64,000 nt of DNA from Setoptus koraiensis (lineage: Eukaryota > Animalia > Arthropoda): the NCBI GenBank assembly GCA_048013815.1, contig CM106585.1, positions 6,510,001 through 6,574,000 of the forward strand, written 5' to 3'. Within the stretch, counting starts at the first letter, position 1, and each line of letters opens with the position of its first letter. Below the pieces are notes generated by a model. That model was not told the origin of the DNA, did no database searches, and was given only the letters and a program-made list of their open reading frames with translations. This document shows positions 16,999 to 46,158 of the stretch, piece after piece. Made by a program: the position numbers and the translations under genes.

Positions 16999-17498
16999 NN
17001 NNNNNNNNNNNNNNNNNNNNNNNNNNNNNNNNNNNNNNNNNNNNNNNNNNNNNNNNNNNNNNNNNNNNNNNNNNNNNNNNNNNNNNNNNNNNNNNNNNNN
17101 NNNNNNNNNNNNNNNNNNNNNNNNNNNNNNNNNNNNNNNNNNNNNNNNNNNNNNNNNNNNNNNNNNNNNNNNNNNNNNNNNNNNNNNNNNNNNNNNNNNN
17201 NNNNNNNNNNNNNNNNNNNNNNNNNNNNNNNNNNNNNNNNNNNNNNNNNNNNNNNNNNNNNNNNNNNNNNNNNNNNNNNNNNNNNNNNNNNNNNNNNNNN
17301 NNNNNNNNNNNNNNNNNNNNNNNNNNNNNNNNNNNNNNNNNNNNNNNNNNNNNNNNNNNNNNNNNNNNNNNNNNNNNNNNNNNNNNNNNNNNNNNNNNNN
17401 NNNNNNNNNNNNNNNNNNNNNNNNNNNNNNNNNNNNNNNNNNNNNNNNNNNNNNNNNNNNNNNNNNNNNNNNNNNNNNNNNNNNNNNNNNNNNNNNNN
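16999..17498. other. Assembly gap (500 N)
   Basis: Run of N. Confidence 1.
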
Positions 17499-38205: not shown

Positions 38206-39143
<938 letters not shown>

Positions 39144-39453: not shown

Positions 39454-40514
39454 TCAAGCTCTAGTTCCTCTGTAATTGTGCGACTGCTTATTGCGCTTTC
39501 TGGATATCAGTCTAGTTTCTATGTAAAACAACAAAGAGGCTATCCATAGAAATATAGAACCTATCAAAGCGGCGACAAACGACCATGAAAATCTATTGTG
39601 ATCCGGGTCCGGCATCCAATCCTCGCGATTTCCATAGATTGCAAATATGGACACGGCAGCCGTGCTACAAATGGCTATTAGTGGTATCAAGGACGAAAGT
39701 TTTCGGAAGTTGGATCAACATGACTCATTCATTATAGATAACATAACCGAATCTTGGTTGAATCGTGACTTACCAGATAGAAGGCTAGCTATAGATAGTA
39801 TTCTAAGCGCGTGATCTTCTCTGTCCACGACAAAACATTGCTGCATGGCGAGTATTCCGACGCACGTAAATAGTAATATTAGGAAGCCCAGTGTAAAAAA
39901 GATCTGAGTTGCTATGAAGAACGCTGTTTGATAATAATTATGGAGGAAAGGTTAAAAGAATCAATATTAGGAATTCAACGTATTGATTAAAAGGGAAATT
40001 CGAATGGATCGTGATCGAAGAGTTAAAGAATAGACTCCCTTAGAGAAAAGTTGTTTTGGGATAAAGCAAGCTGAGTTCGCGCATCGTTAGACTGGTGAAA
40101 CGAACCGGGCATTAAGTAACTGCGGATATATTTATATTCGTCGGCAAATATCCAACGACATCCTACGTAAAATTTTTTGTACTCGTAATCAATAGGCGAA
40201 CTGAAACTTCTGAAGCACATTCTCCAAAGCCCTAGCTTATTGAATTTTGAGCCATAGTATCTATTATCCGACACGAGCCAATAGTTAGAAAAGAAGGCCA
40301 CCAACATTAATATCATGGCTAAAGACAAGACAACAAACAGTGCTCTCCTCACTTGAGACAATTTGTTGCGTTGACCAAATTTTGCTGTTATGGCATCATT
40401 TTGTTCAGTGCTCGCAGTCAGTCTTTGTGTTACCGCTACACCATCTCTTGCTGATGTATTGGAATGTTTGCTAGAGCCACCTCTAGAGGAGCTGTCGTGA
40501 CGACTATGTTCCAT
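39454..40514 (-). CDS. sinu: Claudin, Sinuous-like isoform, 259 aa (exons 40514-40106, 39923-39774, 39674-39454)
   Basis: W...LGLW..C signature, KKFYVGCRWIF, MPAFFIATQIFFTL, DWMPDPDHNRFSWSF; all junctions are phase 1 GT-AG. Confidence 0.88.
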
Positions 40515-41943
40515 GTTCAATGTCTGTCGACAGACCAATCGATGATTGGTCTATCAATTAGAGGTTAAAGTATTAGTTTTTTCTATCTTGTATTGTGATT
40601 GTGCTGTTATGTAACTTGAATTGTGCTTTAGTTCCCGTACGGTTTTGAGTAACAATTTTCTATCATGAGATAATTGAATAACTGAACGCTCGTGTATGTG
40701 TGTGTGTGTGTTTGCGTTGTTAGATCAAGCACCTTGTTGATTGGTGATGACAGCAACAATGGTGTTGAAACTAATATATGGCAGGTGCAAAATAACACGA
40801 AATAATTATGGGCGGTAGATCTATTGATCTATTTGAGTGTTGTTGTTGTTGTTTGTGAAATTACAGCTATGAATTGGCGTAAGTGAGCGTGTTGGCTGTT
40901 TGTTGTTGTTCATCCAGTAATTATTGACTTTTCACACAAACGTAAACAACATGATTGTTATTATTATTTGAATGGTATCGATAACACATCTTCGATACAG
41001 ATATACAGGCAATTGTTGCCTTCGTTACCAAGATAATGTGTATTTGTCTGTATGCGTGTGCCCCGTTCTATCTAGTTTCGTGTTTTTTATCCGTTAATTA
41101 ATACACTAATTAACAAGGTGTGTGAATGAAAAAATGGCGCAGAAACTAGGCTATCTACAGGTCGTCGTCAACAAACACATGTCATTGCCTATTAGTGGTA
41201 TCATGTTTTGTAGTTTTTATCCTTATCGCACTGAAAATTCATGCATAAATAGGCCTGCAATGTAACCTGGTGTCCATTGAGTAAAGCGTGAATAATACTA
41301 CGATGCATCATGGCAGCATAACATTACGCAATTCGTTTTCTTTGGCCAGACACAAACAAGCACACACACACACACACACACACAAACATACACACACACA
41401 GACAGACGGACCAACAGTTTTGGGAGTGGTTGTTGTTGCGGTGGTTCCAAGATCACGGGCCAATGCACCTTGAGAGGTGCAACATCGCAACAACGGCAAC
41501 AACACGAAACATGGCTTGCCATTCCTATTGCATCAACATGTGGCATTACTCTTCAGTGGTGCATTCAAATAATTAAAATTTCTATTGCATCAACAGTGCC
41601 ACTTGTTAGACACGAATGCGTTTTGTTGCTCTCCATCGGTCTGTTGGGCGTCTAATCACCGATCGCAGCAACAACAACAACAACAATTAGCAATTTTGTT
41701 GTCTATTTACAAAAAAAAAGAACACCAGGCTGACTGGTTAGATGCTGACAATGAGCGCCAACGACTATCGTGAAAATACAATTTGCAATGAATCGAGATG
41801 AAATTGAACGGTGTTCGCTTACAACAAACGACACACACAATAGAGTAAAACAAGTGCACTGCATCAGTGCGATTTGGGCGCATGTTGCCAAGGTAACAAC
41901 ATGATGATCAATCTGATTCATGGGCTCACAGCAATACGTTGCG

Positions 41944-41967
41944 TTGCAACGTTACGTAACGTTGCAA
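41944..41967. promoter_or_regulatory. Perfect 24-bp palindrome TTGCAACGTTACGTAACGTTGCAA centred on a PAR-bZIP-type site GTTACGTAAC
   Basis: The sequence equals its own reverse complement. Function is inferred only. Confidence 0.45.
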
Positions 41968-42089
41968 ACGCTCTTGTTTACACTCTTAACTCAATCCATC
42001 CAGATCGAATCACTACGAATGGTTATGTCGTAGCCAGAGAGCGGTTGTGAACAGCGCAAACACATTTAAAAATTCGTCTAACTACTTAC

Positions 42090-42375
42090 GTGGTTCGAGA
42101 AAATTCATTAAAAATGTAAAGTCTTCGTCGAATATCCATTTGCAGCCAGTGACGACGCGATCGTAACGAAAATGAATGTCCTGCAAATTAAAGAAACACG
42201 CCTCCCATAGTCCTAAGCGCTTAAATCTCTGATTTGGTATCTGCTCAGACTCGAGCCAATAGGAGGTGGCAAAGGCTATTGCCATGACAAATGTCGATAT
42301 GAATATTGATATGGTCGCATAGGTGACGCACCTGATCGACATCAGATCTGGAAAAATTTTGATGTGTTTGGCCAT
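42090..42375 (-). CDS. kune: Claudin first exon, Kune-kune-like (TM1 plus ECL1), predicted to splice to the shared exon at 39923 (218-aa isoform)
   Basis: YWLESEQIPNQRFKRLGLWEACFFNLQDIHFRYDRVVTGCKWIFDEDFTFLMNFLEP ends in a phase-1 GTAAGT donor at 42089. Confidence 0.8.
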
Positions 42376-43485
42376 TGTCTTTGATTTTCATCGATGTCTA
42401 TAATTCTTCTAAATATTTATCTCAATACTCATTTGTCTGTTATTCTTGTGTGGATTGTCTATTCTTTAGATCGTCTCTCTTTGTGTGGTCAGTTGCTGTT
42501 GGGGATCGAATGGTGTCTGCGGTGAATCCATTGGATGTCCGTAGGATGGCTGTAGTGCGTGCTCGTTGCTTTTATTGATGAGTGTCTTCATTGGGCTTGT
42601 TTCACGACAGAGAATAAATTCAGTTTCTCTTAAATTTTGCAATTTTGTCCACACTTTTGTCGCAATTCCATACGAAAATCAAATGCTGTTGCAAGTGGAA
42701 AATGATAAGAGAGGGCCACTCGTTTATATCTCAGAAGCCATTGGGTGTGTATGTGTGTGCGTTAGTTTAAATTTTCTGGCCAAACAGAGAGATTGTGAAA
42801 TAGAAAAGTTCTTTAAAAAAAACTATTCCACTTACCGCTGGGTGGAGCCACAAACGAATTGCACCTGTTGTTCTTCCCATACCACTGTCAAGTTAAAAGT
42901 TGTCTGCCTAGGAATAATACACGGCCAGGCGAATGAGCAAGCCAGGCATTTGTGGTTGATATTTTCTCCGCTTTCGTCGCTACAACCACTCTTTTGCATC
43001 ATTCCGGTGTCCACTTTACCGAAACATGTCCCCATTGACCAACCGTAATCATTTTCAAACTTTTTTATTTTGTTTCAGATAGAGCGTTTTGCTAAGACGC
43101 GATCCTTTTTCGATAACTAACGCGGACCAATGTGACCTGTTCGTAGCACTTCAACTGCCTACCAACTGCAAAGTCGAAGAAGATGATAGAAGAGGATTGG
43201 CGACTGGTTGCCGCATAACTCGAGCATGGGCCCAACAAAGACAAATAAATAAACAATCCGAAGAGGGAGGGAGAGAGAAGGGGAAACTGTTCAACCAAAG
43301 GCGCCGAAGACTCCAATCAAATGCGTTTTATCGGTAATCGATACTTCTTTATTAGATCGTTTGGAGGTCGCGAACGTAGATCTTTATTAATAGATTGTAT
43401 TCAAGCAATGCCAGTCGGCCACACACAATTTGAATTCCTCGCACAATTTCGATCTGTCTCAAAGCAATCTACCTCTGTTATGCTG

Positions 43486-46158
43486 TTAATAGTGTTGATG
43501 GGGCAATGCGAACACTTGCTCGTAGTACAAGTCAAAACCAGAACCACGGTTCTTGCCGCGACTGTTAACATAAACTACCAATGGGGAACCGGATACAACA
43601 ACAGAGCCGCGTCCACGATTAAATTGATTGCCGCACATTTCGGCGGTTGAGCCGAAACTAGGCGGAAAAGTGATGACGTCAGAATTCGAACAAGATCTAG
43701 GCTCGCAATGTGGCGGCTCAATAAGTTCTATTTCGGGGAAGACAACCTCGTGGTGACGTTCTTTTTCCTTTTTGCCCTTTTTATCGTCCTTCTTCTGATC
43801 CTTCTTACCATAATCGTAATGTTGATAATTATTTTCATAGTATTTGTCTTCTTTGCTTTTATGATTCTTCTCATTCTGATAGTACATCTCCTCATATTTC
43901 TTGCCAAACTTATCGATTTCCTTGTGGTAAGCTCCGCCAGCATGAGCATAACCATAAGGATAAGCCTGTTGTGGGCCGTATGGCTGTTGGCCGTATGGCC
44001 GGTAGCCTGGGTGGTCCATGCCATGATGGTGCTTCATATGGCCACCTTGATGACCGGCAATTTTGAGGGCCTCATGGTGGCCAGCACTCGGTGTGTATTG
44101 TGGGCCGTAGGTCGGGTATCTAGTGGAGGCGTATGGATTAGGTGTTGATTGGTGGTAGCCTGTTTGGGGGTATTGGGGCCCGTAAGGTGTTAATGTGGTG
44201 CCATATGGACCATTTGTTGACGGGTATAGCTGATGATGAGCTCCGTGATGTTTGTTGCCCTCATGAACAAATTTCATGTGACCTGGATAGTCGCCTGGGT
44301 AAGGCGAGTAGCCTTGATTGTAGCCGTGGGTGGTGTAATTTTCGCCCTTGTTTTTGTTTTCTTCCTCTTTGCTTGGTTCGCTACCCCACAAAAAACTTCT
44401 TTTCATTGGTTGACCATTTAAATCGAGCGACACTTGACGGCGCTCTCTCTTTAGGCTCAATCTACTTTCTACATGCCTTTTATATCTCATAGTTGGCACA
44501 CCATAAGCTGGCGCAGGCGTGTAACCTGGCGGTGGTAGGTGTGGTATATGACCTGGTGGGGCCAGCACTAGGTGGTGAGGATTATAGGGATGATTGTAGG
44601 CTCCCTGTGGCGGAGCGGTCGATTGATAGCCGCCGGGTTGTTGCGAAACATGATATTGTGTCGACTGTCCAGTTTGGTAATGTGGATTCAGGTGAATCTT
44701 CTTTCTTATTAATCCCGGTCTCGACGGTGTGGAACATTCGCCGCTCGACATACCGAAATAGTTATCGGTGAATCTGATACCACTGTATCCGTTGTCTATG
44801 CGAAAACAGATGGCATAGTAGAGACCGCGTAAATTTTTGCCCAAATTAAAACTTCTCACAATACCCGTGGTGTCTGTGTAGTATTGCAAACAACCTGGCG
44901 GGGCCTGAAGATAGTTTTTTTCATCCATTTGTATGATCTTGATAGACCAACGACGACCGTAATTAGAGCCCGATGTTGCCACGGACAACACAATTGGATC
45001 GTCTACTTGTGACACATCTAAATACAAATGCTGACCAGTGTTCATACCGCACAATCTGACATTTGAATAAGGCGAGTATCTATTTGATGCTAGCTTCACT
45101 TGGAAAATATCAGTGACGCACTCACCCTCGTAATCTGGCAGGGCCAATTCAAAGTATTCAAATTCAATAAGAACTTGTGCTATATTCTTAGATTTTTTCT
45201 TAACTTCCACTTCGCACAATCTGGCGTCCCACGAACTATCTGGGAAATCAGGATTAGCGAAGAAGGTGTTGTTTTCGCTGGATTTGTCTCCGCAACTTAG
45301 CGCTATCACACAACAAACACCCAAACCGCCCATGCAAGAGCCCTCCGGGCGCCCCTTTACTTTTCTACAATCAACGTCGTTCTTGCACACTCCCGATTTG
45401 CCTGAAGTATCGCCAGAACAAGAGGTCCATCCGTCAAAACCATAAGTACGAGCCGATGACGGGGCCAATGTTTGGTTGGTTGAAAGTAGGCTGGTATCGA
45501 TTGGAGGAGTTTGGTTAACGTAGGTTGGGATATTTTGAAGTTGGGGCACCTGGTTGGCTGGCATAATTTGACCGTAATTTGGATCTTGCTGGGGCAACAC
45601 AACTTCACTGCCCTTTTCGATGATCTTTGGAGGAGGTGGAGCTGGTTGATAGTTGGCCAAGACTGCCTGGTCCGGACTTGGGGTCAGTCCTAGACCTCTG
45701 CCGGTTGATGCTGGTTTCGGAACTGTTGGATTCTGGGCCTCACCAACCGCTGTGGATGGTTGTTGTTGTTGCTGATGCTGCTCTTGTTGTTCTTGTTGTT
45801 GCGGCGGCTGTTCTGGTTGTTGCTGCGGCTGATCTGGTTGTTGCTGCGGCTGTTCCGGTTGTGCGGATGGTGCTGGAGCGGCTGCTTCCACTTCGGGGGG
45901 CGGTGGTGCATCGGAGGAATATGCTGGATTAGGTGGATTTACTGAGTCGCCGGGGCCCACCCTTTCAGGTTCAACATCCTCAGTTTGTGCTGGTGCAGAT
46001 TGTTGATTTACACTAGTTGGCATACCAATTGGTGGTTGTTGTAAGTAACGTCTAACTTTAGGAATCATCGGCTCGCTTAACGAGTGCGTTGATCTTATGA
46101 TGCTAGTTGATCCAACCAGCATCACTAATAGGACACTCAATCCTATTAGAGGCCTCAT
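43486..46158 (-). CDS. Secreted arthropod CUB-domain protein with Pro/Gln stalk and a large His/Tyr/Gly/Pro insert, 890 aa
   Basis: Signal peptide; GSCMGGLGVCC...CG..NNTFFANP...LCGMNTGQHLY...APPGCLQYYT..SFN...YAICFR...MCG...GFDLYYEQ. Confidence 0.88.
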   Translation of the reverse strand: MRPLIGLSVLLVMLVGSTSIIRSTHSLSEPMIPKVRRYLQQPPIGMPTSVNQQSAPAQTEDVEPERVGPGDSVNPPNPAYSSDAPPPPEVEAAAPAPSAQPEQPQQQPDQPQQQPEQPPQQQEQQEQHQQQQQPSTAVGEAQNPTVPKPASTGRGLGLTPSPDQAVLANYQPAPPPPKIIEKGSEVVLPQQDPNYGQIMPANQVPQLQNIPTYVNQTPPIDTSLLSTNQTLAPSSARTYGFDGWTSCSGDTSGKSGVCKNDVDCRKVKGRPEGSCMGGLGVCCVIALSCGDKSSENNTFFANPDFPDSSWDARLCEVEVKKKSKNIAQVLIEFEYFELALPDYEGECVTDIFQVKLASNRYSPYSNVRLCGMNTGQHLYLDVSQVDDPIVLSVATSGSNYGRRWSIKIIQMDEKNYLQAPPGCLQYYTDTTGIVRSFNLGKNLRGLYYAICFRIDNGYSGIRFTDNYFGMSSGECSTPSRPGLIRKKIHLNPHYQTGQSTQYHVSQQPGGYQSTAPPQGAYNHPYNPHHLVLAPPGHIPHLPPPGYTPAPAYGVPTMRYKRHVESRLSLKRERRQVSLDLNGQPMKRSFLWGSEPSKEEENKNKGENYTTHGYNQGYSPYPGDYPGHMKFVHEGNKHHGAHHQLYPSTNGPYGTTLTPYGPQYPQTGYHQSTPNPYASTRYPTYGPQYTPSAGHHEALKIAGHQGGHMKHHHGMDHPGYRPYGQQPYGPQQAYPYGYAHAGGAYHKEIDKFGKKYEEMYYQNEKNHKSKEDKYYENNYQHYDYGKKDQKKDDKKGKKEKERHHEVVFPEIELIEPPHCEPRSCSNSDVITFPPSFGSTAEMCGNQFNRGRGSVVVSGSPLVVYVNSRGKNRGSGFDLYYEQVFALPHQHY

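What the first reader, a model, noticed from the sequence alone, without database searches (positions are those of the whole stretch)
39454..42375. One claudin gene, two paralogue-like ectodomains: alternative first exons Kune-like and Sinuous-like
Two complete TM1+ECL1 exons (42375-42090 and 40514-40106) both end in phase 1 at the same protein position (FLEP| and YLMP|). Only one set of TM2-TM4 exons exists (39923-39774, 39674-39454), and I found no hydrophobic exon in 40540-42089. Drosophila kune and sinu are separate genes. Here they seem fused into a variable-ECL1/constant-body locus, and ECL1 governs claudin barrier selectivity and adhesion. I know of no description of this arrangement.
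Basis: partly seen in the sequence, partly recalled or inferred. Interest (0 to 1): 0.82.

Follow-up and report, generated by a model that had tools for sequence, protein, structure and literature searches.

The report
Two-headed septate-junction claudin gene
This mite makes two versions of one cell-junction (claudin) protein by starting the gene at either of two alternative first exons, one resembling the fly protein Kune-kune and the other Sinuous; the layout is real and shared with horseshoe crabs and other mites, and it works like the known vertebrate claudin-10 and claudin-18 genes.

Summary
On the minus strand, two complete first exons (1a 42375-42090; 1b 40514-40106) each carry an ATG, TM1 and the first extracellular loop. 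Both end in phase 1 at the same protein position, upstream of the only TM2-TM4 exons in the 64 kb (39923-39774, 39674-39454).

- The a-exon, b-exon, single-body layout recurs in two other eriophyoid-like contigs, in Brevipalpus and in Limulus.
- RefSeq models the Brevipalpus locus as isoforms X2 and X1 with identical bodies.
- An Aceria tosichella protein joins a 1a-type head to the body at the predicted junction.
- RNA-like contigs of this species cover both first exons. Neither first-exon junction was captured; only the exon 2-exon 3 junction was.
- An exon-wise tree puts 1b with insect Sinuous (100/97) and 1a with Kune-kune (90/82).

It is not a local fusion. The arrangement spans Chelicerata. 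The body tree favours, without proving, an ancestral two-headed gene that insects later split into tandem kune and sinu.

The mechanism is not new. Vertebrate CLDN10 and CLDN18 also swap TM1 and the first loop by alternative first exons. I found no paper describing the arthropod case. Interest is moderate.

The parts
42090..42375 (-). Alternative first exon 1a (a-type, Kune-like): ATG, short N-tail, TM1, ECL1 with the W-GLW-C-C motif. Ends in phase 1 after ..NFLEP, donor GTAAGT.
   Evidence: Pfam Claudin_2 E 7e-10. Orthologous exons at 62-70% identity. Tree placement.
42376..42707 (-). Transcribed 5' leader of exon 1a, separated by an uncovered gap (42727-43287) from the upstream CUB gene's 3' end.
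   Evidence: RNA-like contigs cover 42206-42409, 42303-42550 and 42441-42707. Depth is zero at 42727-43287.
40515..42089 (-). Intron sequence for isoform A. Its 3' part (about 40515-40945) is also the promoter-proximal leader of exon 1b. It contains (GT)n and (CAA)n repeats and no claudin-like coding exon.
   Evidence: RNA-like coverage at 40488-40685 and 40723-40945, and none at 41044-42165.
40106..40514 (-). Alternative first exon 1b (b-type, Sinuous-like): ATG, N-tail of about 55 aa, TM1, ECL1. Ends in phase 1 after ..SYLMP, donor GTTCGT.
   Evidence: Pfam E 1.5e-9. An RNA-like contig ends exactly at 40106. Clade with insect Sinuous 100/97*.
39924..40105 (-). Intron between exon 1b and exon 2 (182 nt, GT..AG).
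   Evidence: RNA depth is about 0 at 39922-40108.
39774..39923 (-). Constant exon 2: TM2, the intracellular loop and the start of TM3. It provides the shared acceptor for both first exons.
   Evidence: An RNA-like contig starts at 39924.
39675..39773 (-). Intron 2 (99 nt), seen spliced out in an RNA-like contig.
   Evidence: The joint 39674/39774 skips 99 nt with ends CT..AC, which is GT..AG on the minus strand. Brevipalpus has an intron at the same position.
39454..39674 (-). Constant exon 3: rest of TM3, ECL2 (..DWMPDPDHN..), TM4, C-tail ending ..GTRA, stop TGA.
   Evidence: Pfam Claudin_2 E 4e-8. The 3' UTR is covered down to about 39103.

Best explanation
A single septate-junction claudin gene of the Kune/Sinuous group is transcribed from two start regions.

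Each alternative first exon supplies its own 5' leader, start codon, cytoplasmic N-tail, TM1 and whole first extracellular loop. Each ends with a phase-1 GT donor at the same protein position. Either donor is spliced to the one acceptor at 39923/39924. The products are two four-pass proteins of 218 and 259 aa. They share TM2, the intracellular loop, TM3, ECL2, TM4 and the C-tail. They differ in the N-tail, TM1 and ECL1.

Shown:
- The exon anatomy.
- There is only one body in the window.
- Both first exons are covered by RNA-like contigs.
- Exon 2 is spliced to exon 3.
- The layout is conserved in Eriophyoidea, Brevipalpus and Limulus.
- a-head-plus-body and b-head-plus-body proteins exist in relatives.

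Inferred:
- Both junctions are used in this species.
- The two isoforms do the jobs that Kune-kune and Sinuous do as separate, non-redundant septate-junction claudins in Drosophila.
- The ECL1 difference (31% identity; net charge -3 against +5) gives them different partners or barrier properties.
For: - Anatomy and frames. Pfam matches. Four hydrophobic spans in both products.
- No second body in the window.
- RNA-like runs X4 and X5 give exon-only coverage. They cover 1a (42206-42707) and 1b with its leader (40106-40945), with nothing at 41044-42165. Contigs end exactly at 40106 and 39924. The joint 39674/39774 is present.
- The same a-b-body layout, with phase-1 donors, occurs in L001 and L003, in Brevipalpus L010 and in Limulus L012.
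- Brevipalpus LOC141857064 isoforms X2 (a-type) and X1 (b-type) have identical bodies.
- Aceria tosichella A0A6G1SBP4 (P0183), P0187 and P0194 join an a-type head to the body at exactly the predicted codon.
- The nearest relatives found for exon 1a, 11 exon ORFs on Logan and ENA contigs, are 62-70% identical. Exon 1b is 89% identical to its nearest relative, P0060.
Against: - Neither first-exon-to-exon-2 junction was captured in this species. Only assembled contigs were available, exon 1a depth was low (about 3-8), and its last 116 nt (42090-42205) were uncovered.
- X4 and X5 carry no library label. They are judged to be RNA only from exon-only coverage and one spliced joint.
- Whether P0183, P0187 and P0194 come from transcripts or from intron-less genomic genes could not be settled.
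- Function at septate junctions is by homology only.
Confidence: 0.88

Rival explanations
1. Evolutionary rival (origin, not present function). The arthropod ancestor had two separate tandem genes, kune and sinu, as beetles still do. The chelicerate stem lost the upstream gene's TM2-TM4 exons, so the orphaned Kune-type first exon was captured by the downstream Sinu body. This would be an ancient fusion.
For: - kune, sinu and pickel lie in tandem on one strand in Agrilus, in the same order as a then b.
- The tardigrade Ramazzottius has four separate tandem claudin genes.
- AU tests do not clearly reject chelicerate bodies grouping with Kune bodies (p 0.057 and 0.137). Grouping with Sinu bodies is only marginally rejected (p 0.074 and 0.046).
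Against: - In the body tree, insect Kune and Sinu bodies are each other's sisters (97/86*, or 94/85 after removing long branches). The myriapod Strigamia sits outside them and the chelicerate bodies lie apart.
- That pattern fits duplication of a two-headed gene after the chelicerate split. The fusion model predicts chelicerate body plus Sinu body, which is the least favoured alternative.
- Gene conversion between tandem insect bodies could mimic this pattern.
Confidence: 0.35
2. Exon 1a is not part of this gene. It would be a relic or pseudo-exon of a lost Kune gene, or the first exon of a gene whose other exons lie elsewhere. Its RNA signal would be non-productive transcription.
For: - No 1a-to-exon-2 junction was captured in this species.
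- Exon 1a coverage is low and partial.
Against: - The ORF is intact, with ATG and a strong GTAAGT donor in the right phase.
- At least 11 orthologous exon ORFs, 62-70% identical, keep the same exon end.
- Proteins from other mites and the Brevipalpus RefSeq model join a-type heads to this same body.
- There is no other body in the 64 kb.
- The upstream neighbour on the same strand is an unrelated CUB gene.
Confidence: 0.05
3. A recent fusion of kune and sinu specific to this mite lineage, which is the first reader's 'here they seem fused'.
For: Drosophila kune and sinu are separate genes. Named orthologues form two distinct groups.
Against: - The identical layout is found in Limulus (Xiphosura), Brevipalpus (Tetranychoidea) and other eriophyoid-like contigs.
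- In ticks, an a-type protein of Haemaphysalis and a b-type protein of Amblyomma have near-identical bodies.
Confidence: 0.02

Closest known systems
Vertebrate CLDN10 (claudin-10a / claudin-10b)
   Same: It is one claudin gene with two alternative first exons and a shared remainder. The isoforms differ in paracellular ion selectivity: 10a is an anion channel and 10b a cation channel (PMC7642450). That each first exon encodes TM1 and most of ECL1 is from my own knowledge. Here too the two ECL1s differ in net charge, -3 against +5.
   Different: CLDN10 is a vertebrate tight-junction claudin (Pfam PF00822 type) with a short C-C spacing in ECL1 (own knowledge). The mite protein is an arthropod septate-junction claudin of the Claudin_2 type, with 17-18 residues between the ECL1 cysteines. 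No selectivity data exist for it. The two systems are an analogy and are not orthologous.
Vertebrate CLDN18 (CLDN18.1 lung / CLDN18.2 stomach)
   Same: Two promoters, each with its own first exon, give tissue-specific isoforms of one four-pass junction protein (PMC11178514).
   Different: Tissue specificity of the mite isoforms is unknown. The two genes are not orthologous.
Drosophila Kune-kune and Sinuous (pleated septate-junction claudins)
   Same: The a-type head groups with Kune and the b-type head with Sinuous. ECL1 motifs are shared: a-type/Kune have ..Y.YD..F.GC.WIFDE[DE]Y.., and b-type/Sinu have ..[KR][KR]F[FY]VGCRW... In flies both are required and are not redundant (review PMC4267209).
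   Different: In flies they are two genes, each with its own TM2-TM4 body. Here, and in other chelicerates, they are two heads on one body.
RefSeq models in other chelicerates (Brevipalpus obovatus LOC141857064 X1/X2; Limulus LOC106473481 X1; Tachypleus LOC143233537 X2; Haemaphysalis LOC144176052 X2; Ornithodoros LOC135394253 X2)
   Same: They are orthologous loci. Brevipalpus X2 (a-type) and X1 (b-type) share an identical body, and the Brevipalpus and Limulus genomic layouts match the window's.
   Different: These are automatic annotations labelled 'uncharacterized protein', not a published description. Only one isoform per tick or horseshoe-crab locus was retrieved. Intron sizes differ greatly: about 23 kb for the Limulus gene against 2.9 kb here.

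Membership tests
Claudin superfamily (Pfam PF13903 Claudin_2; PMP22/EMP/MP20/claudin clan) | Profile match above the curated cut-off | tested here: met
   Exon 1a scores 39.4 bits, exon 1b 38.4 and exon 3 33.7, against a cut-off of 29.1.
Claudin superfamily (Pfam PF13903 Claudin_2; PMP22/EMP/MP20/claudin clan) | Four transmembrane helices with a large first extracellular loop | tested here: met
   A Kyte-Doolittle scan finds TM spans at about 14-41, 95-129, 134-160 and 174-199 in isoA, with matching spans in isoB. ECL1 is 54-56 aa long.
Claudin superfamily (Pfam PF13903 Claudin_2; PMP22/EMP/MP20/claudin clan) | ECL1 signature W...GLW..C...C | tested here: met
   1a has YWL..RLGLWEACF..(17 aa)..GCKW. 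1b has YWL..KLGLWRMCF..(18 aa)..GCRW.
Claudin superfamily (Pfam PF13903 Claudin_2; PMP22/EMP/MP20/claudin clan) | Localisation to, and requirement for, occluding (septate) junctions | not testable with these tools
   Known only by homology to Drosophila Kune and Sinu.
Sinuous orthogroup (exon 1b head) | The head groups with named insect Sinuous proteins in a tree rooted on pickel-type claudins | tested here: met
   The clade of all chelicerate b-type heads plus insect Sinu has support 100/97*. The AU test rejects a clade of all chelicerate a and b heads together, p 0.016.
Kune-kune orthogroup (exon 1a head) | The head groups with named insect Kune-kune proteins | tested here: inconclusive
   The group of a-type heads, Kune, Strigamia and a tardigrade has support 90/82, which is not starred. 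The best full-length hit of 1a is a Drosophila Kune at 45% identity.
Alternative-first-exon claudin genes (CLDN10/CLDN18-type architecture) | Two first exons, each with its own start codon, TM1 and ECL1, joined to one shared set of downstream exons | tested here: met
   The same layout occurs in L001, L003, L010 and L012.
Alternative-first-exon claudin genes (CLDN10/CLDN18-type architecture) | Separate transcription starts for the two first exons | tested here: inconclusive
   RNA-like coverage lies upstream of each exon (to 42707 and to about 40945), with none between 41044 and 42165. No 5'-end mapping was done.
Alternative-first-exon claudin genes (CLDN10/CLDN18-type architecture) | Both splice junctions observed in mRNA of this organism | tested here: inconclusive
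   Contigs stop exactly at 40106 and 39924, but no contig bridges either junction. Both forms exist as proteins in relatives: P0183, P0200 and P0202.
Alternative-first-exon claudin genes (CLDN10/CLDN18-type architecture) | Isoform-specific barrier or channel properties | not testable with these tools
   The only hint is ECL1 net charge, -3 for a against +5 for b in this mite. a-type/Kune loops are mostly acidic across taxa, and b-type loops are neutral to basic.

The most novel reading that the evidence does not exclude
The two essential, non-redundant insect septate-junction claudins Kune-kune and Sinuous descend from the two alternative-first-exon isoforms of one ancestral arthropod gene. 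Chelicerates, including this mite, still keep that gene. Insects duplicated the whole unit in tandem and each copy kept one head. If so, everything that distinguishes Kune from Sinu function originally lay in the N-tail, TM1 and ECL1.
Probability: 0.5. Interest if true: 0.62.

Novelty: new member of a known kind. Interest (0 to 1): 0.48.

Why it matters
Drosophila needs Kune-kune, Sinuous and Megatrachea separately to build septate junctions, and it is unclear why. Chelicerates make Kune-type and Sinu-type proteins with an identical TM2-TM4 body and C-tail. This suggests that the functional difference sits in the N-tail, TM1 and first extracellular loop.

That can be tested directly by head and body swaps in flies.

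The locus is also a clean example of the same diversity being encoded as isoforms in one lineage and as paralogues in another. It shows that the CLDN10/CLDN18 strategy arose independently in arthropod septate-junction claudins.

For annotation, chelicerate 'kune' and 'sinu' orthologues should be sought as isoforms of one locus, not as two genes.

Tried and rejected
- A second TM2-TM4 set in the window. tblastn with this gene's own body and with 63 diverse family bodies found only 39454-39923. Weak hits at 45208-45441 (E 0.06 or worse) lie inside an unrelated CUB-domain ORF upstream of exon 1a.
- Direct junction evidence in this species. The single read-laying run used assembled contigs. It confirmed only the exon 2-exon 3 joint. 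No further read calls were available.
- Looking up the full isoA or isoB protein by exact sequence. This was not done, because the spliced proteins have no reference and long sequences may not be typed.
- Finding this species' own spliced proteins in the 5.8-billion-protein set with a body profile that included this window's exons. None was returned. The best hits to the body are 57-67% identical.
- Using a tardigrade to polarise the history. Ramazzottius has four divergent tandem genes and no clear b-type head, so it is uninformative.
- Using a spider. The Parasteatoda locus has an a-type head and the body, with no b-type exon between them. The layout is therefore not universal in arachnids.
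- AU tests on the body tree. They were borderline, p 0.046-0.137, so the order of events is not settled.
- Literature. No paper in the searched library describes a single kune/sinu locus in chelicerates. Nelson et al. 2010 is not held.

Full report
**1. The observation**

- Exon 1a (42375-42090) is 286 nt. It starts with ATG, encodes 95 codons plus one base, and ends ...FLEP with c|GTAAGT.
- Exon 1b (40514-40106) is 409 nt. It starts with ATG, encodes 136 codons plus one base, and ends ...YLMP with g|GTTCGT.
- Exon 2 (39923-39774) follows an AAACAG acceptor.
- Exon 3 (39674-39454) ends in TGA.

Joining either first exon to exon 2 gives an open frame. The products are isoA (218 aa) and isoB (259 aa), each with four hydrophobic spans.

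Both first exons and exon 3 match Pfam Claudin_2 above its curated cut-off. Both first exons carry the W...GLW..C...C loop signature.

1a and 1b are 31% identical. tblastn with this gene's body and with 63 bodies from across the family finds no other TM2-TM4 coding sequence in the 64 kb.

**2. RNA in this species**

Two runs, X4 and X5, carry no library label. They behave as RNA, because their contigs cover exons only and one contig skips 39675-39773 with GT..AG ends.

They cover:
- exon 3 and its 3' UTR down to about 39103;
- exon 2;
- exon 1b and its leader up to about 40945;
- separately, exon 1a and its leader (42206-42707).

Nothing is covered at 41044-42165 or at 42727-43287. Contigs stop exactly at 40106 (the 1b donor) and at 39924 (the exon 2 acceptor).

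So 1a is transcribed as a unit separate from both the upstream CUB gene and the 1b leader. Neither first-exon junction is bridged by a contig, and the last 116 nt of 1a are uncovered. The decisive junction is therefore not shown in this species.

**3. Relatives**

*Exon 1a.* It has at least 11 orthologous exon ORFs at 62-70% identity. All stop being conserved right after ..LEP and then read through a GT donor.

*Eriophyoid-like contigs.* Two contigs long enough to show context, L001 and L003, have the same order: a-type exon, about 0.9 kb, b-type exon, about 140 nt, then one body exon. Both donors are in phase 1. L001 also shares the upstream CUB gene with the window.

*Body profile search.* A profile of the body (A1) retrieved full-length proteins.
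- Aceria tosichella A0A6G1SBP4 (215 aa) is an a-type head joined to the body at the predicted codon.
- Brevipalpus obovatus LOC141857064 isoform X2 has an a-type head and isoform X1 a b-type head. Their bodies are identical.

*Genomic layouts.*
- The Brevipalpus locus (L010) has the a exon, b exon, exon 2 and exon 3, with the body intron at the same place as here.
- The Limulus locus (L012) has the same four-exon order over 23 kb.
- In ticks, an a-type protein of Haemaphysalis and a b-type protein of Amblyomma have near-identical bodies.

The arrangement is therefore old and widespread in Chelicerata, and automatic annotation already treats the Brevipalpus locus as two isoforms.

**4. Which fly genes?**

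A search seeded with the best Drosophila hit of 1a (P0020) and a Glossina protein (P0135) returned named orthologues.
- The P0020 group is Kune-kune, for example D. virilis 'kune' and D. melanogaster Q8SY89.
- The P0135 group is Sinuous.

*Head tree.* In a tree of the head region (87 columns, rooted on pickel-type claudins), all chelicerate b-type heads form a clade with insect Sinuous (100/97*). The a-type heads group with Kune, Strigamia and a tardigrade (90/82). An AU test rejects putting chelicerate a and b heads together (p 0.016).

*Body tree.* In the body tree (126 columns), insect Kune and Sinu bodies are sisters (97/86*). Strigamia lies outside them and the chelicerate bodies lie apart. 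After dropping long branches the support is 94/85.

*AU tests of the alternatives.* These are borderline.

| Constraint on the body tree | p, full set | p, cleaned set |
|---|---|---|
| Chelicerate bodies + Sinu bodies | 0.074 | 0.046 |
| Chelicerate bodies + Kune bodies | 0.057 | 0.137 |

*Reading.* The head split predates the chelicerate-mandibulate divergence, while the insect bodies look younger. This fits an ancestral two-headed gene that was duplicated in the insect line, each copy keeping one head. In the beetle Agrilus, kune, sinu and a pickel-like gene are still tandem on one strand, in the order a then b. An ancient fusion, or gene conversion between tandem insect bodies, is not excluded. 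I put the ancestral-isoform reading at about one half.

**5. Mechanism**

The best-supported reading has two start regions. Each has a first exon that encodes everything up to the end of ECL1, and both use one acceptor.

The two proteins share TM2 to the C-terminus. They differ in the N-tail (about 15 aa against about 55 aa), in TM1 and in ECL1.

ECL1 net charge is -3 for a and +5 for b in this mite. Across taxa, a-type and Kune loops are mostly acidic, while b-type loops are neutral to basic.

In Drosophila, Kune and Sinu are both required for septate junctions and are not redundant (review PMC4267209). By inference, the mite needs both isoforms in its septate junctions. No functional claim was tested here.

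**6. Comparison with what is known**

Alternative first exons in a claudin gene are well known.
- Cldn10a and Cldn10b differ in their first exon and form anion and cation channels respectively (PMC7642450).
- CLDN18.1 and CLDN18.2 come from lung and stomach promoters (PMC11178514).

The mite gene works like these but is not their orthologue. I found no paper describing a single kune/sinu locus in chelicerates, although RefSeq models show it.

**7. Verdict**

The feature is real. 'Fused here' and 'undescribed arrangement' are not right.

It is a new, apparently unpublished member of a known kind of gene architecture, with a moderately interesting evolutionary corollary that remains to be proven.

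Confidence in the two-isoform model is 0.88, and interest is 0.48.

Noticed in passing
L004:5001-5636, L005:843-1478, L006:226-861 (SRR10674650, SRR10674643, SRR10674634); L007 and L008:5001-5675; L009:957-1631: In two other eriophyoid-like species the a-type head and the body form one uninterrupted ORF (211 and 224 aa), with no b-type exon in the fetched flanks. L004 keeps the CUB-upstream and HSF-downstream synteny of L001. Either these are transcripts, or the intron together with the Sinu-type exon was lost, perhaps through an isoform-A cDNA.
   Followed up: partly
L011:9287-20800 (Agrilus) and L013:565-16910 (Ramazzottius): The tandem claudin cluster lies inside a PfkB-family gene on the opposite strand in both a beetle and a tardigrade. 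The beetle cluster is kune, sinu and a pickel-like gene. The tardigrade cluster is four claudin genes. This looks like nested synteny conserved across Panarthropoda.
   Followed up: no
L014:10001-18092 (Parasteatoda tepidariorum): The spider orthologue has an a-type first exon and two body exons, with no detectable b-type exon between them. All named spider hits were a-type. The b-type head may sit in another copy of the gene or may be lost.
   Followed up: partly
window 43486-46158 (-): An 890-aa single ORF with a weak CUB-domain match lies directly upstream of the claudin gene on the same strand. It is highly covered in the RNA-like runs and is syntenic with CUB genes in L001 and L004.
   Followed up: partly
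window 39103-39143 against 38400-39143 (+): The claudin 3' UTR, with RNA-like coverage down to about 39103, overlaps the 3' end of the convergent RING/CCCH zinc-finger ORF (RNF113A-like). This points to tail-to-tail overlapping transcripts in a compact genome.
   Followed up: no
window 39454-39462 (C-terminus) and tick proteins P0219, P0223, P0226, P0227: The protein ends ..GTRA, and the tick orthologues end ..QTRA. Limulus (..GTVI) and Drosophila setifemur Kune, P0020 (..QTDI), end T-x-I. This may be a conserved C-terminal PDZ-type motif, and both isoforms would share it.
   Followed up: no
window 41345-41417, 41660-41695, 40686-40722: (GT)n, (CAA)n and (CA)n microsatellites lie inside the 1a-1b intron and the 1b leader. 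DNA-run contigs break at 41345-41417.
   Followed up: no
window 16999-17498: A run of 500 N, which is an assembly gap.
   Followed up: no
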